Assembly: GCA_047495785.1 (NCBI GenBank)
Contig: JBLDXI010000019.1
Coordinates: forward strand, 372,001 to 436,000
Source of the DNA: Lepidodermella squamata
Lineage: Eukaryota; Animalia; Gastrotricha
Direction: 5' to 3'
Length of the DNA stretch: 64,000 nucleotides
Below the pieces are notes generated by a model. It did not search any database, was not told the DNA's origin, and saw only the letters and a list, made by a program, of their open reading frames with translations. A program made the position numbers and the translations under genes. Below, in pieces: positions 6,261 to 62,103 of this stretch (the stretch's first letter is position 1; each line of letters starts with the position of its first letter).

Positions 6261-7128
6261 GGAATGGCCCTTGAATAACCATTGAAGTTCAGTGTATTGA
6301 AGTTGTATATGCGGATGACGTTTTACTAAACCCGCCCACAGTTAAACAGAGAATTATCTAAAAACGTAAAGAAATGTCTTCTAACATATTACTATCGGCG
6401 AAGGTCGTATAATAAGCATAATAAGAAACCGACTATACTATAATATACACGACATTTTATTTTAGGAAGGCCAGAGCACAAAACGCCAGAACATATCATT
6501 ATCAACAAAGCTATCAAATTCGATGATCAATATTCAATATTCTGAACATCCGTGGAAATGTCTACAGTTTTGAATAAAAACTCAAATGAAGGATCAAATA
6601 AAACAGATTCCGCACCGTCAACCGTCATACGACCAAGCAGCTCCATATGCTAACGGCGCCGGGTTCGCCAATTCATGGAAGGAAAATTTTGGAATGCGAA
6701 GTTACGCGCCAGCGAAAGGAATGAACGGTTCAGTTATCGAGGTTTTGACCGCCCAACCGCAGGCTATCATCATCATGGCTCAACGAGTTTCTATCGATGA
6801 ATCCACCAATCGCCTCAGGATAGCAGCATGTTGGATGACTTGCATTTCGATGTTTTTGGGATCTTTGGTATTATCGATTCCCGCCTGGTTATGCTATCGC
6901 CAAAAGAATCGAAGCTCGGAAGCTAGGAGCAGAAAATCGCGGAAATGCTACATTTTATCAATAGTAACATCAGCGATATCAATCGCTTTGGGCATTTCCG
7001 CCGCTGTCTTTATCATATCGTTCTTGTCGCGCAATATTTGAATTGCGAGCCTAGTGATTTTTATATATTAGTTACTGCGCGCAACATGGCTATATATGCG
7101 GCACGCGCGTGATGTAGTATGAGCGCCA

Positions 7129-9476
7129 AGCGAAAGATCAATACTTGCATATTAAGGAGGGGCCGTTTATGCGGGCGTGTTTTCGCGGGCGAAATTCTTT
7201 GTAACTCGCGGGTTTTTCTTAATTTTTTGATAACTCAGCTAAAAACTGGTCAATAATTGAAAAAAGTGTTGCAAAAGACCAATATTTTAACGCCGCATAC
7301 ACTGGCCCAATGATTGGAGAAATTTCACTGAGTAGATGCGATAATATTTGCAAAATACATGAAGAGCGCTAGTCTAGTTAACGTCAGGTAAACTCCTATT
7401 TTTGTCCGATTTTGTTGCGCCAATGTCTTCTAAATTCGGCTATTTTTTATTTTCGAATTGAATGAGCTTTCCAGGATTACCTTGAGACGGAAGAGCGTGT
7501 TTCTACTACTCGCGTGGAAAGACCTGAAATTACCAAAAATATCACGCCGGCGCAGCAAGTTAATTCTTCGGTGAATTTTTTTTGTTTTCAGTTAAGAAGC
7601 TCTAACGGCTGCTTCCTGCAAGTAAAAGAACAGAAACATGGGATCTGACTCGTTTTAACGACCTTGGCAGGCTCATCAATTATTCAATGAAAAATTACCA
7701 AACCATTCCCATCAGGTTATTTCGGATTTTTTCCGGTCAATTTCGAATTTTCTTCGGTGAAGTGGTAGATTAGAGGCAAGACATTATCTTAATATCTGTC
7801 ATTCAATGAAACTATGTCGTTTTTAAAAAAAAAATTGAAATGTTCAGAACAAAACTTTGACACTGCTTTCAGACACCCTGAATTTACCGATTTTTTTCGG
7901 TTGCGCAAACAATTCGAGTATTATTCCCAAAAAAATGCCATCTAAAGCCTTTTAGATCAATTATTTAGGATTTCACGGAAGAAAAATAAAACTTCCCCGA
8001 AAAACTCCCGAAAAAAACCCGATGGGAATTGTTCGGTAATTTTCGGTACTTAGCTATACTAGACCGTATTTTACCAGTTTTTTCATTCTTCTTGTCAACT
8101 ATGATAGTTGATTAGTATTTCCATGACAGCTGAGATACCCTAATACCATCAGAGTAGTAATAATCCTGGGTTCTTGGCTTTTTCATAAACCCGAAATGCG
8201 GATCGGTCTTTTTGTCCGCTCACTAATCGAAAATTCTTCGGTGAAAATTTTTTGCTTTCAGTCTATAAGCTCAACTTGTAGTTTCCTTCAATCATAGAGG
8301 ATATAATATTAGGTCCACCGACTCGTTTCCATTGGCAGACTCGCGCATTACTCAGTAGAAAACCCGGTAATTATGCTGAAAATACCGAAGGTAAACACGA
8401 CCTACTCAACAAGCGCAATTGAAATCTTTTCGATAGAAAATGTTATGTTAGGTATCCCTCACAAATTCATAATGTTTTAGCTTTAAAAAAGCGAGCCGGA
8501 AGGATCGGGATCGCGTAATAAACCACATCGCAGAATTTCACCGGGAAAAACCGGTTGCAGGTTTGATGCCTACCAGCTGAAAATGTTCACGAAAGCGATG
8601 CGGCAGACTGCGCAAAAACAGTAAGAAATATCGACTAGTTATAATCGAATAAGAAAATTCTGTTTACCACCGATAGGTTTCAGGCTGGTTAGCCGAACAA
8701 TTTCGGTTTCAAACTGGTCAGGCGGTGACTAGTTCGGCTTCGGTGATAATGACATGGATCATACTTTTCGCTGAACAGTAGTACAGAAAGTCGTAAAATT
8801 TCTTGCTGGAAAGTAACTGCCAGTCATAGCAGTCTATTAAAAAAATATTTTACCGATAAATCTCCGAGAATTTAGCGAACGGATCACTGTATATATTTAG
8901 GGTGTATCCGGTATTTCCGGAATTTTCATATAAACAGCGACGTAGTGCTCTTAAAGGTGATCGAAGGCGTTAAACCCAGGTTCAATTGATTGCTTAAGGT
9001 CGCCCTGATATTTTAGACTGAAAAAATCTGAAGAGCGACGTTTGAGTAAAGTGGAATAGCGAATATTACCAAACCATTCCCATCGGGTTTTTCGGTTATT
9101 TTTCGGTGAATTCGTGGATTAGTAGTGCAAAATACCTTAGGTAACATCTGTTTGAGAATAAATCCTCAATTCTTAGGAAAAATGTGGAAAAATAAATTTA
9201 TACAGGGCGTCTAAAGGTAATTAAGAGTTGAATGTTGACATTCTAGATAATTCCAGCGAATTTTGTTATATTAAGTAAATCACCACTTCTAAAGGTATTT
9301 TATATCAAATACGGGACGTATTGACGGAAAATATATATGACCGTGCAGGTGAAATTTTCCGAAATTACGCTCGTCGGATATCTTGATGATATCTTGCTGG
9401 GATATCTTGCGACATTTCACAAGCCCGAGAAGTGATAAGCGGCCCCTCATTAATATGCAAGTATTGATTTTTCGCT
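7129..9476. repeat. Segment inside Sola1 bounded by an imperfect inverted repeat of about 42 bp (possible nested element)
   Basis: AGCGAAAGATCAATACTTGCATATTAAGGAGGGGCCG (7129-) versus CGGCCCCTCATTAATATGCAAGTATTGATTTTTCGCT (-9476). The internal motif ATTACCAAACCATTCCCATC occurs at about 7694 and 9066, and inverted at about 8020. No clear TSD. Confidence 0.5.
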
Positions 9477-10450
9477 TTATGATACGAACCGGATTCACGC
9501 AATCAATAAAGCGGTTTCGCGGCGTCATGCCTCGCGCCTGCACGCCGAAACTGGAACGGTTAGGTGGACGGATAAAAAATTTCGCCGAAACCTGTTCTAT
9601 CGAACAGACATAACCCGGTAACTATCTGATGAACGGTTTATTTTCGACGAATTTTCAAACTGAGAATTTCACGAAAACCGACGTTTAATAACGACATCGA
9701 AGTATTTTCCCCGCACCGAACACCCTTTTAGGTGCGGAATTTATTCTGTTCAAAGTTTATTTTTAGCTACGCTGAAGCACGACGGATATGTTAGTACCAA
9801 AACCGCTGCGAGATTCACAAGTTTTCCGTTGATTGTAGCGTTTGGCGGGCGATTTATCTTTAGTGAAAATAAATAATTTAATTTCATTGACTTTCGTCAA
9901 ATTTACGGACACCTTAAACTGATAGCGCTTATATTTTCATGTTCGTAAAATGTAGCAAAGTTTGCGCTGAATTTTTAGAGACTAGGCTTTTTGTCACCGC
10001 CCTCACGGTTGTCGAGCAATATGGGGCGCCGTGAATCGCGTTTTCAGCCTATTTTTAGCGCGGCGGCGGCGCTCACACACTCCCTCAGCTATATAAGGGG
10101 CGCGGTAGAACTTGGTTTTGATCCACCTTAAAATTTGAAAATGTCGAAATTCACTGTTTTCTTAATTTTTCGGGAAAATCTGTAAGTGTCCTGGCGTTAA
10201 TTAATTACCATTTCTAGTGCAAAGTTTCATGGGTTATTTTAACAGTGCAAGTCAATACCGCCCATCGATTTTGACCAAAATTTGAGATAAAGACAAACTA
10301 GGTAAACTTTCGAAGAAAACATAACATTACATTTATTATGATATAAAATCCATTAGTATGAATTGCCACTCTTACATTGAGACACATTGATGATATAAAA
10401 ATTTCCTATAATGTCATTTTTCAAAAACAATGCAGAAGATTCATGTTAGC

Positions 10451-14660: not shown

Positions 14661-15281
14661 ATGTATACAGTCCTAAATGAAAACTCAAATGAAGAATCAA
14701 ATACAACTGATCACCCGCCGACCTACAACCAAGCAGTTCCGCATAGTGGAAATGGCGCTGAGTTAGCAAATGAAGGATCAAATACAACTGTTCCTCCGCC
14801 GTCATACCACGAAGCAGTTCCTCATGCTGAAGTTGCTGGTTTCGCCGATCCAAGGAAGGAAAATATTGGTAGGCAAAGTTACGTGCCAGCGCCTAGAATG
14901 AACAGTGCAGCTTTCGATGTTGTCACCTCTCAACCGCAGGCTATCATCATCATGGCTCCACGAGTATCATTCGATGAATCAACCAATCGCCTCATGAAAG
15001 CAGCATTATGGTTGTCAGTCATTTCACTGTTCTGTGGATGTTTGTTACTATCGATTCCCGCCTTCATGTGCTATCGCTCAACGAGTCGAAGTCCGCAAGC
15101 TACGAGCAGAAAATCACGAGGTAGCTACATTTGTTCGATAGTGACATCAACGATATCAATAGTTGTCGGTATTGTCGCCACTGTAATTATCATATGGGCG
15201 AGAGTGGCTTCGTTTGATTCATCTGCTACTTCAGCACCTGCTACTTACTACGGGTCTGGTTCATACTATTACGGAAGGTAA
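14661..15281 (+). CDS. CD225/dispanin-like PPxY membrane protein, copy 2
   Basis: PPTY and PPSY in a duplicated 26-aa module, then APRVSFDESTNRL, hydrophobic segment LFCGCLLLSIPAFMCY, basic loop SRKSRG and a TM helix. Confidence 0.85.
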   Translation: MYTVLNENSNEESNTTDHPPTYNQAVPHSGNGAELANEGSNTTVPPPSYHEAVPHAEVAGFADPRKENIGRQSYVPAPRMNSAAFDVVTSQPQAIIIMAPRVSFDESTNRLMKAALWLSVISLFCGCLLLSIPAFMCYRSTSRSPQATSRKSRGSYICSIVTSTISIVVGIVATVIIIWARVASFDSSATSAPATYYGSGSYYYGR

Positions 15282-16558: not shown

Positions 16559-17026
16559 ATGATAACTGCAATCTCGAAAGAAAATGCATATGATGGATCA
16601 AACAAAACCGATGTCCCGCCGTCGGACCACCAAGCAGTTCCACATGCAAATGGCACTGGGTTCGCCAATCCCTGGAAGGAAAATATTGGTATGCCAAGTT
16701 ACGCGCCAGCGACAGGAATGAACTGTGCAGTTGTCGAACCGCAGGCTGTTATCATCATGACTCCACGAGTTTCATTCGATGAATCCACAGATCGCCTCCG
16801 GAAAGTAGCACGTTGGATTTCAGTCTTTTCGCTGATCCTGGGATGTTTGTTTCTATCGATTCCCGCCTGGTGGTGCTATCGCCAAAAGAATCGAAGATCG
16901 GAAGCTACGAGCAGAAAATCGCGGGGCACCTATATTTTAGTAATAGCGACGTCGGCGATATCAATCGTTATGGGCTTATCCTCCGTTGCAGTCCTCATAT
17001 GGTTGAGGATTGTTGACTTAATCTGA
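16559..17026 (+). CDS. CD225/dispanin-like membrane protein, copy 3 (PPxY degenerate: PPSD)
   Basis: Same core (RVSFDESTDRL...LSIPAWWCY...SRKSRGTY) with a very short C-terminal tail. Confidence 0.8.
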   Translation: MITAISKENAYDGSNKTDVPPSDHQAVPHANGTGFANPWKENIGMPSYAPATGMNCAVVEPQAVIIMTPRVSFDESTDRLRKVARWISVFSLILGCLFLSIPAWWCYRQKNRRSEATSRKSRGTYILVIATSAISIVMGLSSVAVLIWLRIVDLI

Positions 17027-18414: not shown

Positions 18415-19101
18415 ATGCTTACAGCCTTGAATGAAAACTCAAATGAAGGATCAAATGCAACTGATTCTAACCGAGCAGTTCCACAAGGTAAAAATGGCGC
18501 TGGGTTTGCAAATGATGGATCAAGTACAGCAACTGATCTCCCACCGTCACACGATCAAGCACATGATGAAAATGTGTCCGCTGGGTTAGCCAATCCAAGG
18601 CAGGTAAATAATGGTATGCAAAATTCTTGGCCAGCGACAGTGATGAACGATGCAGTTATCGAGGTTGTAGAAGCCCGACCGCAGGCAACCTTCATCATGG
18701 CTCCACGAAGTTCCTTCGATGAATCTACCAATCGCTTAAGAAGAGCAGCAGGTTGTATGGCTCGCTTTGCTATGTTTCTTGGTTATGTGCCGCTGTCAAT
18801 TCCTGCTTGGGTATGCTATAGTCTAAAGAACCAAAGTATAGAGGCTAATAGCAGAAAAGCAAGAGGTACCTACGTATGCTCGATAGTGACATCATCGATA
18901 TCTATTGTCCTGTGCATTTTTATCGTTGCAATTTTTATTTCATGGGTGGATTCAAATGTGAAATCGAACTCATCTTCGTTATTGTCCAATTCTGCATCTT
19001 CCTATGAGCATCATATTCATGCGCCACACTCAGGGCATTCAAGCGAAGAAACAAATGACGAGCATGAAGAATTTGCTGAACATTTCAGTGCTGTAGAATG
19101 A
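18415..19101 (+). CDS. CD225/dispanin-like membrane protein, copy 4 (PPSH; His/Glu-rich tail)
   Basis: ATG at 18415 follows TTTAG/GAAA (acceptor of a probable 5'UTR intron). Family core is intact. Confidence 0.85.
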   Translation: MLTALNENSNEGSNATDSNRAVPQGKNGAGFANDGSSTATDLPPSHDQAHDENVSAGLANPRQVNNGMQNSWPATVMNDAVIEVVEARPQATFIMAPRSSFDESTNRLRRAAGCMARFAMFLGYVPLSIPAWVCYSLKNQSIEANSRKARGTYVCSIVTSSISIVLCIFIVAIFISWVDSNVKSNSSSLLSNSASSYEHHIHAPHSGHSSEETNDEHEEFAEHFSAVE

Positions 19102-19320: not shown

Positions 19321-19703
19321 GATCGCCTCAGGATAGCAGCATGTTGGATGGCGTGCATCTCGACGTTTATGGGAGCGGTATTATCGATTGCCGCTTGGTT
19401 ATACTATCGCCAAAAGAATCGAAGCAGGGTGCGATCTTGGATCTCAGAGCTAACAGGTATTTTATCAATCGTAACTCGTAACGTCCGCAATATCAACCGC
19501 TTTGGACACTTCCGCCGCTATATTTGTCACATGGGTGGCGAGATTGTCTAATCATCGCCTTATTCGTCGACTGACCCAAAACCAGTTTATAACTCATTGT
19601 CTAATAAAATTTTGACTTTTACTATGGATTATAACACTGTGATTGTGTTGTTTCCTCTTCTGTTTGTCCGCTGGAGGCTAGGGGCTAATTTAGCTAATAA
19701 ATG
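19321..19703 (+). pseudogene. 5'-truncated, frameshifted family copy 5 (copy-1 subtype)
   Basis: DRLRIAACWMACIS...YRQKNRS followed by frameshifts. The 3' part is homologous to 13295-13479. Confidence 0.75.
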
Positions 19704-19922
19704 AATCCTTTACATTGTTTGATAAGTCATTTTTGTTATCTTTTTTCTGCGTTATAAACAAATCCGTCTTGGCCAGTGTTTAGCCAGACAATTCAAATTC
19801 AAAATTTCAGTATGTAACGTGTAACGGATAATGATAAAATGAAGCTTGATGAAACCAAAGTATACGACAAGTTTATAATTCATTATTCACTTTTTTGGCA
19901 AGATGACTTGATTGCGAGAATG

Positions 19923-20290
19923 CGCCTGGAATGAACGGTGTAGCTTTCGAAGTTGTAACCTCTCAACCGCAGGCTATCATCATCATGACTCCTTAGGTTT
20001 CATTCGACAAATCAACCGATCACCTCAGGAAAGCAGCATGTTGGTTGTCAATAATTTCGCTGTTCTTTGGATGTTTGTTATACTAGCGATTCCCGCCTTT
20101 AAGTGCTATCGCTCAGCGAGTCGAAGTTCGCAAGCTACGAGCAGAAAATCGCGGGGTTGCTACATACGCTCGATAGTGACCTCAGTGATATCAATAGTAA
20201 TCGGCATTTTCGCCACTGTATTTATCTTATATTCGCAGTGGCTTCATTCTCTTCACCTGACCTATAACCTGCTACTTACTACGGAGGGTA
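19923..20290 (+). pseudogene. 5'-truncated, frameshifted family copy 6 (copy-2 subtype)
   Basis: Nucleotide similarity to 14890-15290. The frame switches before LAIPAFKCYRSASRSSQATSRKSRGCY. Confidence 0.75.
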
Positions 20291-23852: not shown

Positions 23853-24521
23853 ATGGTTACAGCCTTGAATGAAAACTCAAACGAAGGATCAACTACAACT
23901 GATCCCCCGCCGTCATACAACCAAGCAGTTCCGCATGGTGAACATGGAGCTGGGTTAGCAATTGAAGGATCAAATACGACTGATCCCCCACCGTCATACG
24001 ATCAAGCACACAATAAAAATGTGTCCCAGCCGGCGACGGTGATGAACGTTACAGTTGTTGAGGTTGTGACCGTCCGACCGCAGCCTATTTTCCTCATGGC
24101 GCCACGAGTTTCATTCGATGAATCCACCAATCGCCTAAGGAGAGCAGCAGGTTGTATGGCTTGTTTTGCTATATTTTTTGGTCTTTTGCCGCTGTCGATA
24201 CCTGCTTTGATATGCTACAACCGAACGAGCCGAAGTGTTGAAGCTAATAGCAAAAAAGCGAAGGATAGCTACATATGCTCGATAGTAACATCATCTATAT
24301 CAATTGCCCTTGGCATTTTAATCACTGCGATTATTGTATGGTGGAGAGTGACCTATTCGTTTTCATCATCGTCCATTCCTCCGCCTAATTATCAAGCTAC
24401 TTTTCTCACATATTTCCCAGATCCAGATCTAGATCTGGTGGATCCAAGCACCACAACCCAACCGACGAATCCCTGGCCTAGAGAATTTGACAAAGCTGAA
24501 TTTTTGAATTCAGGTTTATAG
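23853..24521 (+). CDS. CD225/dispanin-like PPxY membrane protein, copy 7
   Basis: Two PPPSY modules, the family core and a Pro/Thr-rich tail. Confidence 0.87.
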   Translation: MVTALNENSNEGSTTTDPPPSYNQAVPHGEHGAGLAIEGSNTTDPPPSYDQAHNKNVSQPATVMNVTVVEVVTVRPQPIFLMAPRVSFDESTNRLRRAAGCMACFAIFFGLLPLSIPALICYNRTSRSVEANSKKAKDSYICSIVTSSISIALGILITAIIVWWRVTYSFSSSSIPPPNYQATFLTYFPDPDLDLVDPSTTTQPTNPWPREFDKAEFLNSGL

Positions 24522-25006: not shown

Positions 25007-25230
25007 CTCTTGTTTAGCGCACTTGGTTGTGTCATAGCCGTTATTTTCACAATTCTTCGCGAGTTTCAGGTGTTGATCTTCAAATTCTCAGCCAAGATTC
25101 AGCTACATCGTATCCATTATCGCGTCACTGCTGTGTATCGCCGCTTCTATTGCTCTGGTTATAATCCTTAGAATGCTACGATTCCTCAATCCTATCGATT
25201 ATCGATCAGCATACTATACTACGGATGACT
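25007..25230 (+). pseudogene. 3' fragment of a family gene (copy-9 subtype), copy 8
   Basis: Nucleotide similarity to 26520-26731 (CTTGGTTGTGTCATAGCCGTTAT...ACTACGGATGA), with indels. Confidence 0.65.
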
Positions 25231-26122: not shown

Positions 26123-26731
26123 ATGGATGAAATGGAGAGAAGCCCTTCAGTGAAGCCGGAAAGCTCTCCCCCGCCCTATCCCAGCCAAACATCCACTAAT
26201 CAGACGCTGGGTCGAGATTCCTCTTCCAACCAACAGGCTGCAATCAATGCGGGGGCTCCGACGACCAATAACATTCCCATTACGTATTCTCATGAACTTC
26301 AGCGATACGCGCAACAATCGACGCAAGATAATAGATGGATAGGATCCGACTCGAGACCAACTTTCAGTGTGCAGAGAACGTTGACGACTGATCCAACGAT
26401 GCGGCAAGTTATCATGATGCCCGCGTCACAGTTTGCCGTTGAACATCCGGATACTAAGGCTAACAATGGCTTAAAGATCGCTGCAATAATCTTGGCTTGC
26501 ATTGCAGTATCAATGGCGGTGCTCTTGCTCACTTCACTCGGATGTGTGCTAGCCGTTATCTGCGCGTTTCTGCCAAGTTTTGGATGTTGTTCATCAAAAT
26601 CTCTCTCAAAATGCAGCTTCATCATATCTATTATCATTTCACTAGTTTGTATTGCTGCTACAATCGCTCTGATTGTAACAGCTTTTAAAACTACAACAAT
26701 TCCCCAGCCATATCAAGAATATTACGGATGA
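26123..26731 (+). CDS. Divergent CD225/dispanin-like membrane protein, copy 9
   Basis: PPPY, low-complexity N-terminus, LKIAAIILAC hydrophobic hairpin, LPSFGCC loop and a TM helix. Confidence 0.8.
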   Translation: MDEMERSPSVKPESSPPPYPSQTSTNQTLGRDSSSNQQAAINAGAPTTNNIPITYSHELQRYAQQSTQDNRWIGSDSRPTFSVQRTLTTDPTMRQVIMMPASQFAVEHPDTKANNGLKIAAIILACIAVSMAVLLLTSLGCVLAVICAFLPSFGCCSSKSLSKCSFIISIIISLVCIAATIALIVTAFKTTTIPQPYQEYYG

Positions 26732-28527: not shown

Positions 28528-29340
28528 ATGCCTAAAGTGAAGAGAAGGTCTTCCCGCTCTTCAGCGAATAAAAGCATTTCCCCGCGGCATCGAACGCGGC
28601 ATCGAACTGAACAGACGCTGGGTCTTCAAATTTTTAACAAACACGCTGCGATCGATTCGAAGGCGCCGCCGACTTTTACCATTCCGGTTTCGTATTCTCA
28701 TGAACGTCCACGATACTCGCGACCAACGAAGTCTGGTACGAGGAAAGGATCCAAGCCGACAGAAACTTTCACTACGCAGACAACGTTGACGACTGATCCA
28801 TCGTTACCGCAAGATTTTACGATGCCCGAATTAGAAGAAGATTCTGTCGAATTGCGGGATAATTCACCCTGCAAAGGCTTACGGATGGCTGCAAGAATCC
28901 TGGCTTACATTTCTGTATTTATGGGGCTGTTCTTGTTCACTTCAATCGGTAATGTCATAGCCGTTTATCTCGCATTTCAGAGACCCCGAAATATATCCAA
29001 ATGCTGGCTACGACTGGCCTACATCACATCCATTATCGTGTCACTAATCAATATCGCCGCTTCAATCAATCTGATTGTTGTGTTTGTCCGGCTATTAAAA
29101 GCAGTAATCAGTTTACTACATGCGTGCACCGAACTAGTTCAGATGGCTAACGACTTGAAAGCGTTACAAGCGTTCGTGTCATTCGAATTGCCGGATTTAC
29201 TTAATGATAATAGTTTACTGTTTGATTCGTTAAGAAATCAATCCTCATGGTTACTGAATATTACGAATCGAACATACACACTGAATGGCAAGGCAAAAAT
29301 GTTTAACAGCAGCTTTAATAATAGCAGCAATTTTATTTGA
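28528..29340 (+). CDS. Divergent family member, copy 10 (basic N-terminus, long C-tail with N-glycosylation sequons)
   Basis: Paralog of copy 9 (IPVSYSHE, TLTTDP, GLRMAARILA, YITSIIVSL). Upstream DNA is homologous to 25950-26120. Confidence 0.78.
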   Translation: MPKVKRRSSRSSANKSISPRHRTRHRTEQTLGLQIFNKHAAIDSKAPPTFTIPVSYSHERPRYSRPTKSGTRKGSKPTETFTTQTTLTTDPSLPQDFTMPELEEDSVELRDNSPCKGLRMAARILAYISVFMGLFLFTSIGNVIAVYLAFQRPRNISKCWLRLAYITSIIVSLINIAASINLIVVFVRLLKAVISLLHACTELVQMANDLKALQAFVSFELPDLLNDNSLLFDSLRNQSSWLLNITNRTYTLNGKAKMFNSSFNNSSNFI

Positions 29341-30689: not shown

Positions 30690-31331
30690 ATGTCTCAGCA
30701 GCCACAGCAGCAGCAAGAGACGAATCCTTCACGAGCTTCCCCTCCCGAAAATGCCCCACCAGGATACCAACAAGCAGTCTCAACGCAACCTTTGCAGCCC
30801 GGCTATGCCCCGAAATATGGCCAACTACCGCCTGTAAACTACAACCAGGTTGCACCTCCGATGTATCAGGATGGTAATACCGCCTATTACCAGCAGCAGC
30901 CAATTGTAGCTCAGCCTTATGCATACGATCCGAATGGCCAGGGCGTCAACCATGTTGTCATCTACCAGCCGGGTACTGCTATGCCCACCCAGGTAATTTA
31001 CGCGGCGAGACCCTCTTTCGACGAACCAACAGACCGGATGCGAAGGGCTGCAGTCGGAATGGCTATCACTGCAATGTGTTGCGGATTCTGGATCTTGTCG
31101 ATTCCTGCTCTAATCTGCGCTTTAGTGCCAAGTTGTGGGACTCACCCGTCGAGTAGACGGTCGCGCGGTTGCTACATCGCTTCAATTGTCTTCTCGGTCT
31201 TGGCCATTATTGGAACAACAATTGCTATCATCCTGATCATTGTTTATCGAAGGAACTACTACACCTACTACTCGAATTCGGCTTACTCAAGAGTCGATTC
31301 CCCGAGTGGTAGCGTATATTTTCAAGGTTGA
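30690..31331 (+). CDS. CD225/dispanin-like protein, copy 11 (most canonical-looking; P/Q/Y-rich)
   Basis: PPGY and PPMY. AITAMCCGFWILSIPALIC resembles the CD225 CC-containing intramembrane segment, followed by SRRSRGCYIASIVFSVLAIIG. Confidence 0.88.
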   Translation: MSQQPQQQQETNPSRASPPENAPPGYQQAVSTQPLQPGYAPKYGQLPPVNYNQVAPPMYQDGNTAYYQQQPIVAQPYAYDPNGQGVNHVVIYQPGTAMPTQVIYAARPSFDEPTDRMRRAAVGMAITAMCCGFWILSIPALICALVPSCGTHPSSRRSRGCYIASIVFSVLAIIGTTIAIILIIVYRRNYYTYYSNSAYSRVDSPSGSVYFQG

Positions 31332-35661: not shown

Positions 35662-36412
35662 TCCTGGCCCTCAAGGTGTGAGATGGTAAATGAGGAAATA
35701 TTTGCGAAAAAGGATCTGAATATGTGCACACCCTTTTAATAGACAATGATTAATGAAGTGTTGTTTCGCGACTTCTGTGAGTGAATGTTCTTACCGTCCT
35801 ATCCTATGTCTGCGCACTTGTTTGAACTGGCTGAGCAAATTATCAGGGCGGAAGACTTGATTAAGATATCACACGATTTTTTTCCTGCTCTAGGAATTGA
35901 GTGCTATCTTTTATCAGCACCCACTTCCGGTATGATATGATTCAACCTAAAGAAATCCATCCAAGAGTCTGGTCCCGTGCCAAAAAGTATGGAGATCGGG
36001 CTCAGCTCGACCAGCATTTAGGGCATCTTCTGTGATTCGGTTCACGACTAGAATGTTTTCATTATCAAATTTCAAATTTTCAAAATTGGAAATCCGCCTT
36101 AAATTTTCTCAGGATTACTTTATCGCGACCAAAGAATGCTGAGAAATAATACTATCCGGAAATTGGAAATAGCCACTCGAGCGTTCAAGAGTGAGCGATC
36201 GATCGGGCGAGTTCGCTCACGGGCAAAAAACTCAGCAAGTATGAAAAGAAAATACAATTCCATGTATTAGTTAGTTCTGGAATCGATAAGCCACAGTTTA
36301 GACTAGTTTTCTTTTGTTGTTGATTTTCTCGGCCATGCACTCACCAGTATTCATCCTTCCCTGACAACCCTAGAAATTAGAGTGTTTTATTTCTGTTTCT
36401 ATGGCATTCAGA

Positions 36413-36982
36413 ATGAGGCCTGAAATGTATTATAGTAATAAAACAATAGATCCACGTTTATTCCGTATGAAAATTGGCGTACCAGTGCCAAGCCGTCCGG
36501 ACCGTTTGGCGACTCTTAGCGCTGTTTTACCGCCTTCACCTAAAAAGGTCCACCACGGGCACTTCGAACCTACACCATTTAATGTTCAAAACTGGACAGA
36601 AAAGTCGCTCGAATCGAGTACATATTCAAATACAAGTCACATTTTCTACTACAACAAGGACGGTCTAACTCTGTATGACATCGACTGTCGAAAGGAGAAA
36701 CGATGTAAAATTGGAGCAATTATAGTATCAATTTTAAGCTTGATACTTACACCTAGTCCCTGCTCGATTGTCGCAGCTGTTATGTCTCTTCTACCTTCAT
36801 TTTGCAGGGTCTACACTCCGATCGGGTTCTACAAGGTTGCAATTTATTTCGCCGCTGCTTCATTTATTATCGGTCTCATAATTATGACCGCTTTATTAGC
36901 TTATTACGCAAATCGTTCGTCTGATGATGCTCTACCGAAATTGCAAAATTCAACTGCGGCAAATATGACAATAAATAACTGA
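36413..36982 (+). CDS. Highly divergent member of the CD225-like family, copy 12
   Basis: Same C-terminal layout (CKIGAIIVSILSLILTPSPCSIVAAVMSLLPSFC, then a TM helix). Closest to 61546-62103. Start is 36413 (after TTCAG) or 36401. Confidence 0.7.
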   Translation: MRPEMYYSNKTIDPRLFRMKIGVPVPSRPDRLATLSAVLPPSPKKVHHGHFEPTPFNVQNWTEKSLESSTYSNTSHIFYYNKDGLTLYDIDCRKEKRCKIGAIIVSILSLILTPSPCSIVAAVMSLLPSFCRVYTPIGFYKVAIYFAAASFIIGLIIMTALLAYYANRSSDDALPKLQNSTAANMTINN

Positions 36983-37076
36983 CCGATATCAGTTAGTGTG
37001 GTTTGTGATAATAAGGTGATAAGAAAGGGTTATTATCAAACACCGACGAAACACAACTAGCCATCAGTTTAGCGTG

Positions 37077-53407: not shown

Positions 53408-53837
53408 TCATGCCAGGCATTTTTCTCGGCGCTTGGAAGCCCTGAGTGATGCGTTATAACAGGAGACGCATAGGAAGATGCGGAATGGGGCGATGATGAA
53501 GATTGGTCGACTCAGCATTACAATAATTGCAATGATTATAATTCCCAGGAAAATTGATAACGATGATGTCACTACCGAGCATACGTAGGTATCCCTCACT
53601 TTTTCCTGTTTGCATCTAGACTTCGGTTCGCTCGGTTGTAGCAAGCAGGTATCGATAGCGGCCAAAGACAAAAAACGCAGCAAAGTAAACCATACAACCT
53701 GTTGCTCTTCTTAGGCGATCGGTAGATCCATCGAATAAGGAATCTTGTGGAGCCATGATGATGGTTGCCTGCGGTCGGGCTGCCACAACCTCGATTACTG
53801 CAGCGTTCATCACTGTCGCTGGCCGAGAATTTAGCAT
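53408..53837 (-). pseudogene. 5'-truncated, frameshifted family copy 13
   Basis: 53660-53837 is almost identical to 56075-56257. Frameshift near 53675, and similarity stops abruptly at 53837. Confidence 0.8.
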
Positions 53838-55775: not shown

Positions 55776-56477
55776 TCAATCAATCAGTCCGAAAATTTCA
55801 ACTCTGGGAATTTCAAATTCTTCATGCCAGGCGTTTTCGGCGTTTTCGTCGCTTGGATGCCCTGAGTTATGCATATGACCAAAATCCGCATAGGAAGATT
55901 CGGAATTGGACGATGATGAAGATCTGTCGGAAAATAGCAGCCATCCAATAATTGCAGCAATGTTAATGACAATTGATATAAATGATGTCACCACCAAGCA
56001 TATGTAGGTATGCCTCGCGTCTTTGATATTTAATATTGGGCTCATTCGGTCGTAGACCATCGCAGCAGGTATCGACAGCGGCCAAAAACCAAAAAACATA
56101 GCAAAGTAAACCATACAACCTGTTGCTCTTCTTAGGCGATCGGTAGATCCATCGAATAAGGAATCTTGTGGAGCCATGATGATGGTTGCCTGTGGTCGGG
56201 CTGCCACGGCCTCGATTACTGCAGCGTTCATCACTGTCGCTGGCCGAGAATTTAGCATACCGTTATTTTCCTTCCTTGGATTAGCTAACCCAGCGGACAC
56301 ATTTTCATCATGTGCTTGATCGAATGACGGTGGTAGATCAGTATTTGTTTTTGCATTTGATTCATCATTTGCAAAGACAGCGCCATTTTCACTTTGTGGA
56401 ACTGCTAGGTTACAATGGGACGGAGGATCCGTTGTATTTGATCCTTCATTTGAGTTTTCATTCAAGACTGTAGGCAT
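55776..56477 (-). CDS. CD225/dispanin-like membrane protein, copy 14 (inverted paralog of copy 4; PPSH/PPSF)
   Basis: MPTVLNENSNEGS start and family core. Flanks are homologous to 17740-19320 in reverse orientation. Confidence 0.85.
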   Translation of the reverse strand: MPTVLNENSNEGSNTTDPPSHCNLAVPQSENGAVFANDESNAKTNTDLPPSFDQAHDENVSAGLANPRKENNGMLNSRPATVMNAAVIEAVAARPQATIIMAPQDSLFDGSTDRLRRATGCMVYFAMFFGFWPLSIPAAMVYDRMSPILNIKDARHTYICLVVTSFISIVINIAAIIGWLLFSDRSSSSSNSESSYADFGHMHNSGHPSDENAENAWHEEFEIPRVEIFGLID

Positions 56478-56782: not shown

Positions 56783-57330
56783 ATCTTGGATAGGAAGAAA
56801 ATTCCGGATGATGCATCGACCGGGTTTTACTCATTCGTGAGCGTTTAAGCTTAACGACAATTGCTCACGCATTAAGATGAAAATAATGCTGAACTGCCTT
56901 TGACGTGCCATGCGTGGGTTGTTTTTGACGACAAGTGAGACCGTCCGCATGAACAGTAATAAAATAGTTGGCGTAGCGATTCAAAAAGGAATTGTGTGCG
57001 AACTCATAAAAACCGTTTCACGGCCAAAAATATGGTTCCATCAGCCAAGCAAAACATATTATTTCGTAAAATATGGGACTGGTCGGAGAATTGACACCTG
57101 TATACTAAGCTGTGGACTTCAGATATCGGTTTCTAATTTGACTGAGAGTTTCAATCACACTAGTTAACATAGATTCATCCGGTTTCATAGAATTCGTCTG
57201 GTTAATGTTTATTTATCTATTTTCAAAAAATTCCTCGAATACCTACACGACAGGAGATTTTAATTCTTACAGGAAAATGTCGATCTAACAGCGTTTCATC
57301 GCTCTGAATCAAATTCATGCGGTTATTTTC

Positions 57331-59195
57331 CTTGGGACTAATAGTAGATGGACTCGACACTTCCTATCTAACGCATAATAAATCGTTCGGGGAGACCGGG
57401 GAGGCAAAAAACGTGGGGATTGATCGCGTGTTGTTTTGATCGCAGAAAAAAATGGCCGATTAACAATAAATTCAACCGCAAAACCAGCATCTCACCATTA
57501 CGCGAATTTTATGTCGTCGATTTTACGCTGGGCACATGTTTACTCCAAAACAACACACCTTTTTCTTGAATTAATTGAACCATCGCATAGATCATAGTTC
57601 GAGGATCGCAGCGATGAAAAATTTATCGGCTATTTAACTTTAGAAGCCAGTGCAATTTCGCTTTGATTATAAGCTACCGCCTTGTGCGCATAATTTTTAA
57701 GGCTGATCAATGATATTTTCACTGCCTTTTGGGGTGAAAATACACAAAATAAGGCTTGTTCATCGGACTCATTGGCCGATTACAATAGGCTTCGCAGTTC
57801 ACGCAGTGAATTTAATATTAAACGATTCCCCATAATTCCATAGGTATATCATTTGGCATTTTGCTGGCATTTTGGCATTATTGAATTTTGAAACAATTTC
57901 ATGGCTAATATGGTAGAAATCGTAAGATCTAAAAGAGCATTTGATCGGAGGCCAATTGATATTATGTTCCGCTTTCGATTACATCTCAACTATTTTTAAA
58001 CAAATGAATCAAATAATGGGGAAAGGTATGGATAAAAATATCTCAGTGGATAAAAATATTCACACGAAAGGATACTATAGTATGTTTACAAAAGTTATAT
58101 TAAAGTTATATTTTAACTGTTGCTAAATATTTTGCAAACTTTGTTCCGAAATCAAGCGGAACCAACCTCTAATCCTAACGATCATAACGCTAACTTTCGC
58201 GACTGAAAAATTGGCTATAAAAGCCAAACCCAAATTTAAATGGTGTAAAAATAGTTAGGATTACACGGAACCTTTTTATCAATGCGCCTAAAAATCCTTG
58301 CAAATTTAGAGATAATTACTCCCATATTCAGTTGTTCTTCTGAATAATGAAACATAATTTCTTATTTAGGAAGTTGAGATTTAATTATTAATTTGTTAAA
58401 TAATATTTTATTTTTTGGCATCGTAGCGTGCGTCCTTCGTTGCTCTTTTTGAATCTTCAAGAATTATTTTCATATCGCTTATACCTGCGGAGAAATCGTG
58501 ACCCCATTGCCCAAGATTGGCAATTTTTCGCCGCTTAACACTTTAACTGCCAAAATTAGACTGCGAGATCCGATATTTGGATCCAAATCCTGGGTCTGTC
58601 GAAAAGTCCTTTTTTCTGGTCAACGGTGCTTCGTATGGCAAAATGGCCGACGGCAAAGTGTAGGCTGTAGGCCATAACCCGGCGGTTCTTTTGACACCGA
58701 ATTTGGGGGCACAAGATCTGAGCAGGTCTTTGAAAATGACAGTGAAAAAACGTCGAAATTTTGGATTAGAGCCAAAAAGCAGACCCAAGAATTGGACCTA
58801 ATTATTAGACCCACATTATGGCGCAACAATCGAAATTTCACTGTTTTTACAAGTTGATTTCTGTGCGTTCCTTGAAGTCTTTGGCCCCAAATTCGGTGTC
58901 AAAAGAACCGCCGGGTTATGGCCTACACTTTGCCGTCGGCCATTTTGCCATACGAAGCACCGTTGACCAGAAAAAAGGACTTTTCGACAGACCCAGGATT
59001 TGGATCCAAATATCGGATCTCGCAGTCTAATTTTGGCAGTTGAAGTGTTAATGGGAGAAGGCTGTGTGTTGTTGTAAAAAGTAAAAGTTATTTTCATTCA
59101 TAATTTTAGCGTGAAAAAAATCGCGATTCAGCCATTTTTTGCTCCCGTCCGAATGATTTTGAGGAGTGTCGAGTCCATCTACTATTAGTCCCAAG
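57331..59195. mobile_element. Non-autonomous TIR element, superfamily uncertain
   Basis: 31-bp TIR CTTGGGACTAATAGTAGATGGACTCGACACT. Flanks TTATTTTC / CTATTTTC give an 8-bp TSD with one mismatch. It interrupts sequence that is continuous at about 17720. Confidence 0.8.
58539..59047. mobile_element. piggyBac-type foldback MITE nested in 57331-59195
   Basis: TTAA|CACTTTAACTGCCAAAATTAGACTGCGAG ... CTCGCAGTCTAATTTTGGCAGTTGAAGTG|TTAA with arms of about 170 bp or more. Confidence 0.85.
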
Positions 59196-60113
59196 CTATT
59201 TTCAGCCTTTCACGATCAAAAATTTTACTGAGATCTTTTATAGTTGATCGTGGCGCAGGATTGACTAGGATTGACTAGGACTCGAAGCAAATAGTTATAG
59301 GGCATAACTACCCACATGCACAGAAACTCACTCTGCTCTGAGGAGCAAAATGACTTGCGTAGAAAGTACAAAGGTTATGACAATTCTTCTCAGCGATATA
59401 AATTCATTTTTCCAAACATGGGATTCACCATTCAGGTTTCAAAAGTTTCCAAATAACAAACGAAGGTGTGCGACAAAAGTTCTGCGCATTCAAAATTGTA
59501 CAACGAATGATTTATGTCGTACTGCTATATGTCTTTCTGTATCAAATGTTCTCGTTTTCTTATTCTTCTAGCATGCTAAAGTAGGCTGACGTGATAAATG
59601 TGTCGATTGTCGATGGTTTGTTTCATATGGCCCCAAGCGACTATTACCTGCGTTTTATCCATTATCCATAAAGTGTTAATTGATGCGGTATTGTGAGTTG
59701 TAGCCGATATTGGCGTTTATTGTGAGCTACTTTTGACCATCATCGCGATTTCTGATGATTTCGTGCGGGAAATGTACAGCTAACCGGCCTGCAGATAATG
59801 TACAGTCAGGTTAAGTCTCATACGAATCAGGAACGATCCCTGGCATCCCCGGCATCTTCTAATCGGTCAATCATGTACATGCTATATGATGTTATGAGTT
59901 ATTCACTCCGGGGTCGATGCGAGCGTTAAAACGGCGCGCGACTCTATGGACATAAGTCATCTTGCTAAAACAAGCCGGCTTACTTTGGTTTCTTCAAACT
60001 TCAAACGAAAATTTTATTTATGAATAATCGGCGAGATTCTGGATCTGAGCTGAAAATAAAATCTGAAAAATTCGCGAATCTAACAATTGAATTGAACATT
60101 CATCAGATTGTTA

Positions 60114-60761
60114 TCAGCCATATAAAGCAGAATTGTAATAAGTAGGCTTGGTATCTGGCGACGATGGCGATGAGGAGGACATTTTCGCCATTACAATAAC
60201 TGCAGCCAGGGAAATTCCCAAAAAGATTGACACCGATGACGTCACTATCGAGCAAATGTAGGTACCCCTCGACTTTATGCTAGTAGCTTCTTGACTTCGG
60301 TTTTTTCTGCTATAGCATATCAAAGCAGGAATCGACAGCGGTAAACATCCCAAGAATATTGCAAAGCCTGTCATCCAAGCTGCTGCTTTCCTGAGGCGAT
60401 TGGTAGATTCATCGAACGAAACTCGAGCAGCCATGATGATAATAGCCTGCGGCTGGGCAGGCATAGGCTCAACAGAAGATGCACCACTTATTTCCGTCGC
60501 TGGAAGGTAACTTTGCACAGTAATATCGTACTTCCTTGGATAAACGGGCCCAACGGCTTCCCGACGTCGCTGCTCTCTGATTTCATAAAATCTGCTTCTG
60601 TCCGCTACAGGCGCAGGTTGAGTTTGCATTTGAACCGCTGTATCTATTTGGGAAGGCCGTGGTCCCGGACCTTGTTTGCCGTCCGTTATCTGAGTTAACT
60701 CTTGTTCGTAGTAGACGTTAGCTTGGCCATAAGTTTGAAAAGCTGGATTGGTATAGCTCAT
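60114..60761 (-). CDS. CD225/dispanin-like membrane protein, copy 15
   Basis: MSYTNP N-terminus as in copy 16, and core QPQAIIIMAARVSFDESTNRLRKAA as in copies 1-7. Confidence 0.87.
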   Translation of the reverse strand: MSYTNPAFQTYGQANVYYEQELTQITDGKQGPGPRPSQIDTAVQMQTQPAPVADRSRFYEIREQRRREAVGPVYPRKYDITVQSYLPATEISGASSVEPMPAQPQAIIIMAARVSFDESTNRLRKAAAWMTGFAIFLGCLPLSIPALICYSRKNRSQEATSIKSRGTYICSIVTSSVSIFLGISLAAVIVMAKMSSSSPSSPDTKPTYYNSALYG

Positions 60762-61545
60762 TTTTTAAAAGCTGAGATTAATGAATGATTGAATAAAAAA
60801 GAAAACGAGTGATTGAATGAATGAAAGGAAGATGAAAGCGTTTCGAGAGTGAATGGAGTAAATGGGTTAAGCTAAAATTAGCCAATATGTCTGTTAGAAT
60901 GCAAGTACCTCTGTGAAAGTGTTAATATTCGCTATCATTTTTTGATCCGCCAGTTAACCCCTAATGTCCCAAGTTTGACTTGCGCCCAATCTAATTAAAC
61001 GCCAAAATTGTGAAAATATATTGACAGACTTTGAATTTGGGTTCAAGTACGGCAATTAAAAATGAAATGCTCAATTAAGTTGACACTGAAACTCCTGCAC
61101 ACCTTCCCAAGTCTACCTTTCAAGTAATTACCTCCATTGGCTTTGAATTTTCAGAGATATTATAGCGGCTTGATTGATATTCATCTAGAGCTTGCTTCAG
61201 ACAGCCCAGAAGCAACACTAAACTAAAAATAAGCCAAATTAACGTTCTAAATTCGAGGTTTGCCGCCGAGGCCACGAGGTCATCTTAACATTTCCTGAAA
61301 TTCCACGAAAATGATTATTCATGCCACTCATCTATGAATAAGAACCAATCTATATAAAGATCACGTTTATTAGGAAAAAAGTCAGTGATCTTATGTCGAT
61401 TACCTAATCTTGCGCAATCAGATTAGGATTAGTGTGGTTAAATAAAGGGTGTATAATCTGGAGTACGTCTTTCATGAGAATCGATTGATCAATGTCAATT
61501 GTGAGTTTCGGATGTATTCTTGCGTTCGTAGTTCGTAGATATTCC

Positions 61546-62103
61546 TTAGTCTAATCCGTAATAGTTGCCGTAGTTATAGCCGGTGCTGTACGAAGTCCTC
61601 GCGCCTCCCGTAAAGTATGCTATGACAAAAATAATAAAAAGAATACCAAGCCCTAATCCGATTGACCCCATAATGTAGCCGACCATGTGGAATTTACGCG
61701 GCTCAGCCACCTTGCAGCAGTCGGGGGTCACCGCGCAAACCAGAGCGATCATACTGCAATACATGGGACCAAACAACACTGCGAATACCGAAAGAGCAAT
61801 GCTACAACCACGGGAACATTGCGTTGGATGAGCTTGGGAATCGTCGACAATGAAAGTCACGACATTGGACGGTATTGGCTGGTTGACAGCAGCCATCATA
61901 GATGGCGGATGCTGATCTCTTACTTCATAAGTACAGCTTCTCGCTGGTGGACTCAGGTTAGATTTATGAGCCGATTGAGCGGGTGGAGCGACAGATGTGT
62001 ATTGAGGAACTGGATCATTCTTGTCATTAGATACCTGTGCCATTTCTTGCTGATCTGGGCCAGGCTGGTCATAAGTTTGATAAGTAGGATTTGTGTAGCT
62101 CAT
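61546..62103 (-). CDS. Divergent CD225/dispanin-like protein, copy 16
   Basis: P/Q-rich N-terminus, CSIALSVFAVLFGPMYCSMIALVCAVTPDCC, a TM helix and a Tyr/Gly tail. Upstream 62104-62590 is homologous to 60762-61220. Confidence 0.8.
   Translation of the reverse strand: MSYTNPTYQTYDQPGPDQQEMAQVSNDKNDPVPQYTSVAPPAQSAHKSNLSPPARSCTYEVRDQHPPSMMAAVNQPIPSNVVTFIVDDSQAHPTQCSRGCSIALSVFAVLFGPMYCSMIALVCAVTPDCCKVAEPRKFHMVGYIMGSIGLGLGILFIIFVIAYFTGGARTSYSTGYNYGNYYGLD

What the first reader, a model, noticed from the sequence alone, without database searches (positions are those of the whole stretch)
6558..62103. Expanded, fast-evolving array of about 16 non-canonical IFITM/CD225-like membrane proteins in an invertebrate: candidate undescribed restriction-factor or membrane-defence locus
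Seen: 11 intact intronless ORFs and 5 pseudogenes share an architecture of PPxY-bearing low-complexity N-terminus, Cys-rich hydrophobic segment (MCCGFWILSIPALIC), basic loop, TM helix and variable tail. Established: this layout, including vicinal palmitoylatable Cys and an N-terminal PPxY, is that of dispanins such as IFITM3, whose vertebrate clusters evolve by birth-and-death. Difference: the loop is about 8 aa shorter than in CD225 and lacks the GD..GA motif, so this may be a new subfamily or a convergent family. Inference: tandem expansion, pseudogenisation and tail hypervariability suggest host-pathogen conflict or recognition.
Basis: partly seen in the sequence, partly recalled or inferred. 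Interest (0 to 1): 0.82.

Follow-up and report, generated by a model that had tools for sequence, protein, structure and literature searches.

The report
Unnamed two-helix membrane protein gene cluster
The window really does hold 16 copies (12 intact, 4 decayed) of a small, unannotated membrane-protein gene that is built like the antiviral IFITM proteins, but by sequence it is a distant relative of the bacterial DUF4190 domain, not a demonstrable CD225 member, and a defence role is only a guess.

Summary
Between 6,586 and 62,103 there are 12 intact single-ORF genes and 4 decayed copies of one family: a Pro-rich N-terminus, a 25-35 aa Gly/Pro-kinked hydrophobic segment, a short basic loop, one TM helix and a short Tyr/Ser-rich tail.

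No Pfam or NCBIfam model claims these proteins. CD225 scores at most 7.5 bits against a cut-off of 27.1. A scan of 1.84 billion protein representatives found 46 hits, none close. The eukaryote-type hits are unnamed metagenome ORFs sharing PPxY, a CCCG/CFCG motif and "SIPA..LA.LPEC". In one contig they form a nine-gene tandem array.

The same window-only profile also retrieves genuine bacterial DUF4190 proteins (E 1e-5 to 9e-4). hhalign gives 97-98% probability for that link, while decoys mostly score under 25% (highest 72%). The only CD225 signal is a marginal PRRT1 hit in PDB (E 0.005-0.06, tied with Asterix). The dispanin G-D motif, A-x6-A motif and loop intron are all absent.

The copies are old (dS 0.3-1.3) and under weak purifying selection (omega 0.4-0.7 in the core, about 0.8 in the N-terminus). 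Positive selection is not shown.

Verdict: a new eukaryotic family within a DUF4190-like two-helix fold, IFITM-like in layout. A defence function is untested.

The parts
6586..7041 (+). copy 1, intact ORF (151 aa). Short N-terminus, no tail, PPxY lost (QPSY).
14661..15281 (+). copy 2, intact (206 aa from the ATG). Two PPxY motifs (PPTY, PPSY); tail ends in a Tyr/Gly-rich ...YYYGR.
16559..17026 (+). copy 3, intact (155 aa). PPxY degenerate (PPSD), no tail.
18415..19101 (+). copy 4, intact (228 aa from the ATG). Acidic extended tail. Lies in a block that is an inverted duplicate of the copy-13 block.
19321..19485 (+). decayed copy: degenerate core with deletions and a broken second helix.
19922..20238 (+). 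decayed copy: in-frame stop and a frameshift inside the core.
23853..24521 (+). copy 7, intact (222 aa). Two N-terminal PPSY motifs; long tail.
25053..25163 (+). fragment of a copy-8-like gene (loop plus second helix) with an in-frame stop.
26123..26731 (+). copy 8, intact (202 aa). Old lineage with PPPY, 'FLPSFGCCSS' loop, tail ...EYYG.
28528..29340 (+). copy 9, intact (270 aa). Sister of copy 8; 70-aa tail with six N-x-S/T sequons.
30690..31331 (+). copy 10, intact (213 aa). The most canonical member: PPGY and PPMY, MCCG motif, 'SIPALICALVPSC'. Best match to the profile built only from metagenome proteins (E 2e-25).
36401..36982 (+). copy 11, intact (193 aa). Solitary and very divergent; lies between the SLC13-like and sugar-transporter genes.
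53516..53837 (-). decayed copy split over three reading frames. Its N-terminal part is 95% identical in protein to copy 13.
55776..56477 (-). copy 13, intact ORF (233 aa). It has lost the basic loop, and its core omega against its nearest paralogues is about 0.9-1.0, so it may be non-functional.
60114..60761 (-). copy 14, intact (215 aa). Used as the query for the structure model.
61546..62103 (-). copy 15, intact (185 aa). Old lineage with 'CAVTPDCCK' loop. Its 5' end and upstream DNA are 76% identical to those of copy 14.

Best explanation
The locus is a birth-and-death cluster of single-exon genes for small membrane proteins of an unnamed eukaryotic family. That family is an ancient, very divergent relative of the bacterial DUF4190 two-helix domain. 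Shown: the family and its 16 copies; its relatives in another eukaryote, where it also forms a tandem array; and the DUF4190 link. Inferred topology: the Pro-rich N-terminus and the strongly basic loop are both cytosolic. The first hydrophobic stretch (25-35 aa, kinked at G-x-L-P-L-S-I-P) therefore dips into the membrane as a helical hairpin without crossing it. The second helix crosses, and the short Tyr/Ser-rich, sequon-bearing tail is outside or lumenal. This is the topology favoured for IFITM3. Inferred mechanism: the ancestral protein carries PPxY, which docks WW domains of NEDD4-type ubiquitin ligases, and a Cys cluster beside the hairpin, a candidate for S-palmitoylation. It would then be a lipid-anchored endomembrane protein whose trafficking and turnover are set by ubiquitination. 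It could work as a ligase adaptor or as a modifier of membrane properties. Within the window, one lineage expanded to seven intact plus three decayed copies, lengthened and charged the loop, and mostly lost PPxY and the vicinal Cys under weak constraint. That suggests sub- or neo-functionalisation, or partial decay. A defence role is possible but untested.
For: Family and copies. A profile built only from metagenome proteins (A6) hits all 12 intact copies at E 2e-25 to 2e-9, and hhalign of A2 against A6 gives 99.5%. Relatives: 46 hits in 1.84 billion representatives, best E 4.6e-14. L001 carries nine tandem paralogues. In the nearest clade, 13 of 16 proteins have PPxY and 14 of 16 have CC/CCC/CFC. 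DUF4190 link: the window-only profile retrieves proteins that pass the PF13828 cut-off (39-76 bits) at library-wide E 1.4e-5 to 8.8e-4. hhalign gives 96.6-98.4% probability with scores of 54-81, against decoy scores of 14-31 and decoy probabilities mostly under 25% (highest 72%). Six of the ten top eukaryotic hits show weak DUF4190 matches. Topology: summed net charge over 33 proteins is +58 for the loop and -5 for the C-flank; sequon density is 2.8 per 100 aa in tails against 1.1 in N-termini. The AlphaFold model shows helix ESTNRLRKAAAWMTGFAIF, a kink at LGC, helix LPLSIPALICYSRK, a loop, and a long helix 2. Constraint: core omega 0.42 (NG86) and 0.69 (ML; omega=1 rejected at p=0.010). PPxY-NEDD4 docking and the IFITM3 topology are taken from PMC13194588.
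Against: No expression, localisation or modification data exist. The topology rests on the positive-inside rule and a model of moderate confidence (mean pLDDT 69). The DUF4190 sequences were first picked by similarity to the window profile, although the later 73-sequence set was chosen by its Pfam label. The nearly invariant G-M-A-I-A-G of DUF4190 is not kept in this family. PPxY is absent from 8 of the 12 intact copies. Omega of 0.7-0.8 fits partly decaying genes as well as functional ones. The source organism is unknown.
Confidence: 0.55

Rival explanations
1. The family is a true but very divergent CD225/dispanin subfamily. It would share descent with IFITM and PRRT proteins and work the same way.
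For: Same layout and inferred topology. CC or C-F-C in the first helix of copy 10 and of most outgroup proteins, as described for dispanins in PMC3282796. K/R-rich loop. A conserved Asp before helix 1 (FDEST). PRRT1's CD225 domain is the best natural PDB hit over both helices (E 0.0054 with A4, 0.062 with A6). One DUF4190 protein, P0046, also matches CD225 at 2e-4.
Against: PF04505 scores at most 7.5 bits in window copies and 10.6 bits in relatives, against a cut-off of 27.1. The window-only profile found no CD225 protein at E<=1e-3 in 1.84 billion representatives. The G-D motif, the A-x6-A motif and the loop intron are absent. Asterix, an unrelated protein, scores the same as PRRT1. The DUF4190 profile does not hit PRRT1, and 59 DUF4190 proteins do not co-hit CD225.
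Confidence: 0.2
2. The cluster is an innate-defence or recognition locus evolving under host-pathogen conflict, for example as membrane-fusion restriction factors.
For: Independent tandem expansions in two eukaryotes. Pseudogenes. Omega is high for a membrane protein, at 0.7-0.8 by ML. Tails are diverse and probably exposed outside. The architecture is analogous to IFITM3.
Against: Omega is below 1 in every alignable region, and omega=1 is rejected for the core and for the whole gene. The tail value of 4.5 comes from 22 saturated codon columns (tree length 49) and is unusable. Duplicates are old (dS 0.3-1.3). Tails are not simply hypervariable: a Tyr/Gly-rich ending recurs across old lineages and in outgroup P0004. 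There is no induction or infection data and no viral homologue.
Confidence: 0.15
3. Most copies of the seven-member expansion are functionless relics with intact ORFs. Only the canonical members (copy 10, perhaps 8, 9, 11 and 15) are working genes with a housekeeping trafficking role.
For: N-terminal omega of 0.82 does not differ from 1 (p=0.21). Copy 13 has core omega of 0.9-1.0 against its nearest paralogues. PPxY and vicinal Cys are lost in this lineage. Three of the four decayed copies belong to it.
Against: Seven ORFs of 151-233 aa remain open at dS 0.3-1.3. Core omega is significantly below 1. Start codons and the M.TALNENSNEGS N-terminus are conserved among four copies.
Confidence: 0.1

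Closest known systems
Unnamed eukaryotic 'SIPA...LPEC' proteins from ENA/JGI metagenome assemblies (P0001-P0014, P0016, P0017, P0034, P0035; array on L001)
   Same: True family relatives. Size is 130-190 aa, mostly with an N-terminal PPxY, 'LRIPA' before helix 1, CCCG/CFCG, S-I-P-A in the kink, and 'Y-I-x-S-I-x-L-S' in helix 2. They are single-ORF genes and form a tandem array of nine.
   Different: The loop is only 5-9 aa and reads 'LPEC'. The window's seven-copy expansion instead has a 15-17 aa, +3 to +6 loop ('CY.RKNRS.EA.S.KSRG') and has largely lost PPxY and CC. The source organism is unknown and its genome is more compact.
DUF4190 (Pfam PF13828), a bacterial two-helix membrane domain
   Same: Two hydrophobic helices with a short polar loop. 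There is a shared small-residue/Cys-rich first helix with an (S/G)-I-(P/x)-A-(I/V)-I motif. The similarity is statistically supported in both directions.
   Different: No window copy reaches the Pfam cut-off, and none is even listed. The nearly invariant G-M-A-I-A-G at the start of DUF4190's helix 2 is replaced by R-x-x-Y-I-x-S-I. The eukaryotic family adds PPxY and a Tyr-rich tail. The function of DUF4190 is itself unknown.
CD225/dispanin proteins (IFITM3, PRRT1, PRRT2)
   Same: Works-like resemblance. There is a long disordered N-terminus that can carry PPxY. The first hydrophobic domain probably does not cross the membrane. Cys residues sit beside it, the cytosolic loop is basic, there is one true TM helix, and the C-terminus is short and external. 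Genes occur in tandem clusters. PRRT1 is the top natural PDB hit (PMC13194588, PMC3282796).
   Different: It fails the Pfam model. The loop is 10-11 aa shorter. There is no G-D or A-x6-A motif and no intron in the loop. An amphipathic helix like that of IFITM3 is not shown: the hydrophobic moment peaks at 'NRLRKAA' in several window copies but not in the outgroup.
PPxY-bearing NEDD4 adaptors such as NDFIP1/2 (from general knowledge, not tested here)
   Same: Small polytopic membrane proteins whose cytosolic PPxY motifs recruit WW-domain HECT ligases.
   Different: NDFIP proteins have three TM helices, and no sequence relation was seen in any scan.

Membership tests
CD225/dispanin (PF04505) | Match to the Pfam CD225 model at its gathering score (27.1 bits) | tested here: not met
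   The best window copy scores 7.5 bits (E=6) and the other 14 give nothing. The best relative scores 10.6 bits.
CD225/dispanin (PF04505) | G-D motif and A-x6-A motif in the intracellular loop (PMC3282796) | tested here: not met
   Loops read e.g. RKNRSQEATSIKSRG, HPSSRRS or RSRGS. There is no G-D or A-x6-A in any of the 12 copies or in the outgroup.
CD225/dispanin (PF04505) | Conserved splice site in the loop between the two helices of metazoan members (PMC3282796) | tested here: not met
   All 12 intact copies read through the loop as one ORF, although neighbouring genes do carry roughly 50-nt GT-AG introns.
CD225/dispanin (PF04505) | Double Cys (C-C or C-F-C) and a conserved Ala in the first helix | tested here: inconclusive
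   The Ala of S-I-P-A is invariant. CC or CFC is present in copy 10 and in 14 of 16 nearest outgroup proteins. It is absent from helix 1 of the seven-copy expansion.
CD225/dispanin (PF04505) | Two hydrophobic segments joined by a K/R-rich cytosolic loop | tested here: met
   Summed net loop charge is +58 over 33 proteins. This feature is not specific to CD225.
CD225/dispanin (PF04505) | Significant profile similarity to a solved CD225 protein | tested here: inconclusive
   PRRT1 chain 9zks_M scores E 0.0054 with A4 and 0.062 with A6. Asterix scores E 0.007 in the same search. Foldseek of the model against PDB found nothing.
DUF4190 (PF13828) | Match to the Pfam DUF4190 model at its gathering score (35 bits) | tested here: not met
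   No window copy is listed. Eukaryotic relatives reach at most 18.6 bits.
DUF4190 (PF13828) | Significant reciprocal profile similarity to bona fide members (superfamily level) | tested here: met
   Library-wide E of 1.4e-5 to 8.8e-4 to proteins scoring 39-76 bits on PF13828. hhalign probability of 96.6-98.4%. Reversed and block-shuffled decoys score 14-31 against 54-81 for the real pairs, and their probabilities are mostly under 25% with a maximum of 72%.
DUF4190 (PF13828) | Nearly invariant G-M-A-I-A-G at the start of helix 2 | tested here: not met
   The DUF4190 alignment A7 shows G73 M74 A75 I76 A77 G78. The window family has (S/K)R-G-x-Y-I-x-S-I at that position.
Unnamed eukaryotic SIPA-LPEC family (metagenome ORFs) | Match to a profile built from those proteins alone | tested here: met
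   Profile A6, which contains no window sequence, hits all 12 intact copies at E 2.2e-25 to 2.3e-9 and three of the four decayed loci. hhalign gives 99.5%.
   No LITAF or CYSTM hit in any copy. CD20 appears only at E 0.049 (14 bits, cut-off 27.9) in one copy.

The most novel reading that the evidence does not exclude
This would be an undescribed eukaryotic family of PPxY- and Cys-bearing hairpin membrane proteins, anciently related to bacterial DUF4190 and either convergent with or very distantly related to dispanins. It would repeatedly expand in tandem and act as an IFITM-like membrane-defence or fusion-control system in animals that lack interferon.
Probability: 0.12. Interest if true: 0.8.

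Novelty: new variant of a known kind. Interest (0 to 1): 0.5.

Why it matters
If the layout reflects function, this would be a second route to small, ubiquitin-regulated, acylated hairpin proteins that tune membrane behaviour, independent of CD225. It would also give the large and wholly uncharacterised DUF4190 domain its first eukaryotic branch with testable motifs (PPxY, a Cys cluster). On the practical side, 12 genes here and at least 9 in another eukaryote have no name in any of the libraries and collections searched here. Defining the family (alignments A4 and A6) would let genome annotators recognise it.

Tried and rejected
- **Word-index protein searches.** These were useless for this family: copy 14's core gave no hit, not even itself, and alignment A4 gave only two already-known hits.
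- **Window protein look-up.** The copy at 30690 is not on record in the assembly collection.
- **PDB.** The A1 profile found nothing. Foldseek of the better model against PDB found nothing.
- **NCBIfam.** Nothing.
- **Rfam and tRNA scans.** No hits in the window and only a tRNA in the related loci, so they gave no clue to the organism.
- **Pattern scans for more loci.** No relative in JGI metagenome contigs with subfamily-A motifs or LPEC motifs, and none in IMG/VR viral contigs. Three earlier attempts failed because the alignments were too diverse.
- **Obtaining referenced CD225 sequences.** The third protein search, with P0046, returned only PF13828 proteins. tblastn of P0045 on plasmids returned only DUF4190-annotated genes. 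A direct profile-profile test against CD225 could therefore not be run. The PRRT1 stretch printed has no reference, so I did not type it into any tool.
- **Transitive route from DUF4190 to CD225.** Rejected, because the DUF4190 profile hits CD20 rather than PRRT1 and CD225 is not among the families co-hit by 59 DUF4190 proteins.
- **Variant genetic code.** I considered this because several neighbour ORFs are split by single in-frame stops. I rejected it because these are ordinary GT-AG introns of roughly 50 nt.
- **Tail omega of 4.5.** Rejected as saturated.
- **Paper searches.** Nothing for the metagenome sample ids or for DUF4190.

Full report
**What is there**

The window looks like an animal genome. 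GC is 0.36-0.45. It carries nuclear-receptor-type zinc-finger genes, an ankyrin-rich TRP-like gene, an SLC13-like gene and an MFS sugar-transporter gene. These neighbours have ordinary GT-AG introns of roughly 50 nt. Nothing suggests a human origin. I could not name the organism: there were no tRNA or Rfam hits, and the window's proteins are absent from the protein collections.

The ORF list, tblastn of each copy against the window and a six-frame HMM scan find 16 loci of one family and no others.

- **Intact ORFs (12):** 6586, 14661, 16559, 18415, 23853, 26123, 28528, 30690 and 36401 on the + strand; 55776, 60114 and 61546 on the - strand.
- **Decayed copies (4):** 19321-19485 is a degenerate, truncated core. 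19922-20238 has a stop and a frameshift. 25053-25163 is a fragment with a stop. 53516-53837 is spread over three frames, and its N-terminal part is 95% identical in protein to copy 13.

The genes do not form one array. There is a + strand cluster, a - strand cluster and a solitary copy, separated by unrelated genes. An inverted segmental duplication, 17312-19311 versus 55565-59589 at 76-80% identity including non-coding flanks, ties the two clusters together.

**Anatomy**

All copies share the same layout:
- a low-complexity N-terminus;
- a conserved 'PQAIIIMA.RVSFDESTNRLR.AA' lead-in;
- a 25-35 aa hydrophobic stretch kinked at G-x-L-P-L-S-I-P-A;
- a basic loop;
- a second helix, 'Y-I-x-S-I-V-T-S-x-I-S-I';
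- a tail.

PPxY survives in only four intact copies and is visibly degenerate in others (PPSD, PPSH, PPSF). Vicinal Cys occurs in copies 30690, 26123 and 61546 only.

The tails are not simply hypervariable. A Tyr/Gly-rich ending (YYYGR, ALYG, NYYGLD, EYYG, VYFQG) recurs in separate old lineages and in outgroup protein P0004. Copies 4, 7 and 13 share a derived acidic extension. Copies 1 and 3 have no tail.

**Relatives**

No Pfam model claims any copy. CD225 appears once, at E=6 and 7.5 bits. NCBIfam gives nothing.

Because the word search and family scans left the protein open, I ran the exhaustive search with a profile of the 12 window cores (A2). It returned 46 hits at E<=1e-3 among 1.84 billion representatives, with the best at 4.6e-14 and none close. 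All 20 hits I looked up exist only as unnamed ORFs of ENA or JGI metagenome assemblies. The contigs I fetched come from one BioSample series.

The eukaryote-type hits are 130-240 aa proteins. Most have PPPY near the N-terminus, then 'LRIPA', CCCG or CFCG, 'CSIPALILA.LPEC', a 5-9 aa loop and 'YI.SI.LS..AI'. On contig L001, nine of them lie head to tail next to a GT6 glycosyltransferase gene. The family therefore expands in tandem in at least two eukaryotes.

A profile made only from these metagenome proteins (A6) detects all 12 intact window copies at E 2e-25 to 2e-9, with copy 30690 the best. hhalign of A2 against A6 gives 99.5%.

The tree puts the window copies in at least three old lineages:
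- a seven-copy expansion (support 100/99) that is sister to copy 10;
- copies 8 and 9;
- copies 11 and 15 together with P0019, on long branches.

**Which known family**

The same window-only profile also pulled in bacterial proteins that pass the Pfam DUF4190 cut-off: P0026, P0029, P0036, P0045 and P0046, at 39-76 bits. Their library-wide E-values were 1.4e-5 to 8.8e-4. Six of the ten top eukaryotic hits show weak DUF4190 matches.

Profile-profile comparison gives these results:

| Comparison | hhalign probability |
|---|---|
| A2 vs the DUF4190 hits (A5) | 98.4% |
| A6 vs the DUF4190 hits (A5) | 98.0% |
| A2 vs 73 DUF4190 proteins chosen by Pfam label | 96.6% |
| A6 vs the same 73 proteins | 98.3% |

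Reversed and block-shuffled decoys score 14-31 against 54-81 for the real pairs. Decoy probabilities are mostly under 25%, with a maximum of 72%. I therefore regard a superfamily-level link to DUF4190 as supported. Family membership is not: the Pfam cut-off is not reached and DUF4190's G-M-A-I-A-G is not kept.

For CD225 the evidence is thin. PRRT1's CD225 domain is the best natural PDB hit over both helices, with a 10-11 residue gap in the loop. However, E is only 0.0054 with A4 and 0.062 with A6, and Asterix ties with it. The defining G-D motif, A-x6-A motif and loop intron (PMC3282796) are all absent. The DUF4190 profile does not hit PRRT1, and DUF4190 proteins do not co-hit CD225. I could not run a direct profile test against PF04505, because no CD225 sequence with a reference was available.

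**Topology and likely mechanism (inferred)**

Over 33 family proteins the loop carries a summed net charge of +58, against -5 for the C-terminal flank. N-x-S/T sequons are 2.8 per 100 aa in tails and 1.1 in N-termini. Copy 9's tail alone has six.

PPxY has to be cytosolic to meet WW domains. With both the N-terminus and the loop cytosolic, the first hydrophobic stretch should be a re-entrant hairpin and the tail should be external. The AlphaFold model (mean pLDDT 69) breaks that stretch into two short helices at L-G-C. This is the topology favoured for IFITM3, whose PPxY docks NEDD4 (PMC13194588).

I therefore propose a lipid-anchored endomembrane protein regulated by ubiquitination. This is a proposal only: none of these steps has been shown.

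**Evolutionary rate**

All figures below are for the seven copies of the expansion.

| Region | NG86 median omega | ML omega, GY+F3X4 | Test of omega=1 |
|---|---|---|---|
| N-terminus | 0.72 | 0.82 | p=0.21 |
| Core | 0.42 | 0.69 | rejected, p=0.010 |
| Tail | 0.86 | 4.5 (unusable) | not tested |
| Whole gene | not computed | 0.73 | rejected, p=0.0012 |

- dS ranges from 0.3 to 1.3, so the duplicates are old.
- The tail's ML value rests on 22 codon columns with a tree length of 49 and cannot be used.
- The genes are therefore weakly constrained, and fast-evolving in that sense. Positive selection is not shown.
- Copy 13 looks neutral in the core, with omega of 0.9-1.0 against its nearest paralogues.

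**Verdict**

It is partly unsupported: CD225 membership and host-pathogen conflict are not shown. The family is best described as a new eukaryotic branch of a DUF4190-like two-helix fold.

Noticed in passing
window 41749-42016 and 43486-43753: Two 268-bp inverted repeats, 99.6% identical. They enclose ORF 42205-42735 (-), which contains a 36-bp coding tandem repeat, and a 107-bp tandem array at 43031-43469. This looks like a recently inserted element with terminal inverted repeats.
   Followed up: partly
window 32362-32823 (-), 39256-39693, 41071-41748, 51199-51591 (+); also 40303-40623, 44161-44520, 52322-52762: Four divergent nuclear-receptor-like genes. Only 41071-41748 was scanned against Pfam (zf-C4, E 8e-6). 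The first zinc finger appears to lack a canonical Cys. Each + strand copy is followed by a possible ligand-binding-domain ORF. 39323-39868 and 41207-41746 are 72% identical.
   Followed up: partly
window 10678-11544 and 11653-12738 (-): Two long ORFs of a transposon-like element (weak DUF7869 match) lying between family copies 1 and 2.
   Followed up: partly
window 17312-19311 vs 55565-59589: Inverted segmental duplication at 76-80% identity that includes non-coding flanks. It links the + strand and - strand clusters of the family.
   Followed up: yes
window 33655-35323 (-), 37074-38378 (+), 44602-49796 (-): SLC13-like, MFS sugar-transporter and ankyrin-rich TRP-like genes with large exons and GT-AG introns of roughly 50 nt. 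Several exon pairs happen to be in the same frame, which mimics single in-frame stops.
   Followed up: partly
L001 2939-10649: Nine tandem paralogues of the same family, all on one strand, next to a GT6 glycosyltransferase gene. The host is an unidentified, intron-poor eukaryote from a metagenome, and the same contigs turn up in two assemblies.
   Followed up: partly
window 931-1706 vs 5300-6090; 22044-22199 vs 22345-22500: A direct repeat at 83% identity and a 156-bp inverted repeat at 95% identity. Neither is related to the family. They are probably dispersed repeat elements.
   Followed up: no
window 60724-61128 vs 62066-62457: The 5' coding ends and upstream DNA of copies 14 and 15 are 76% identical, although their cores belong to different old lineages. 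This suggests exchange or a shared promoter and first segment.
   Followed up: no
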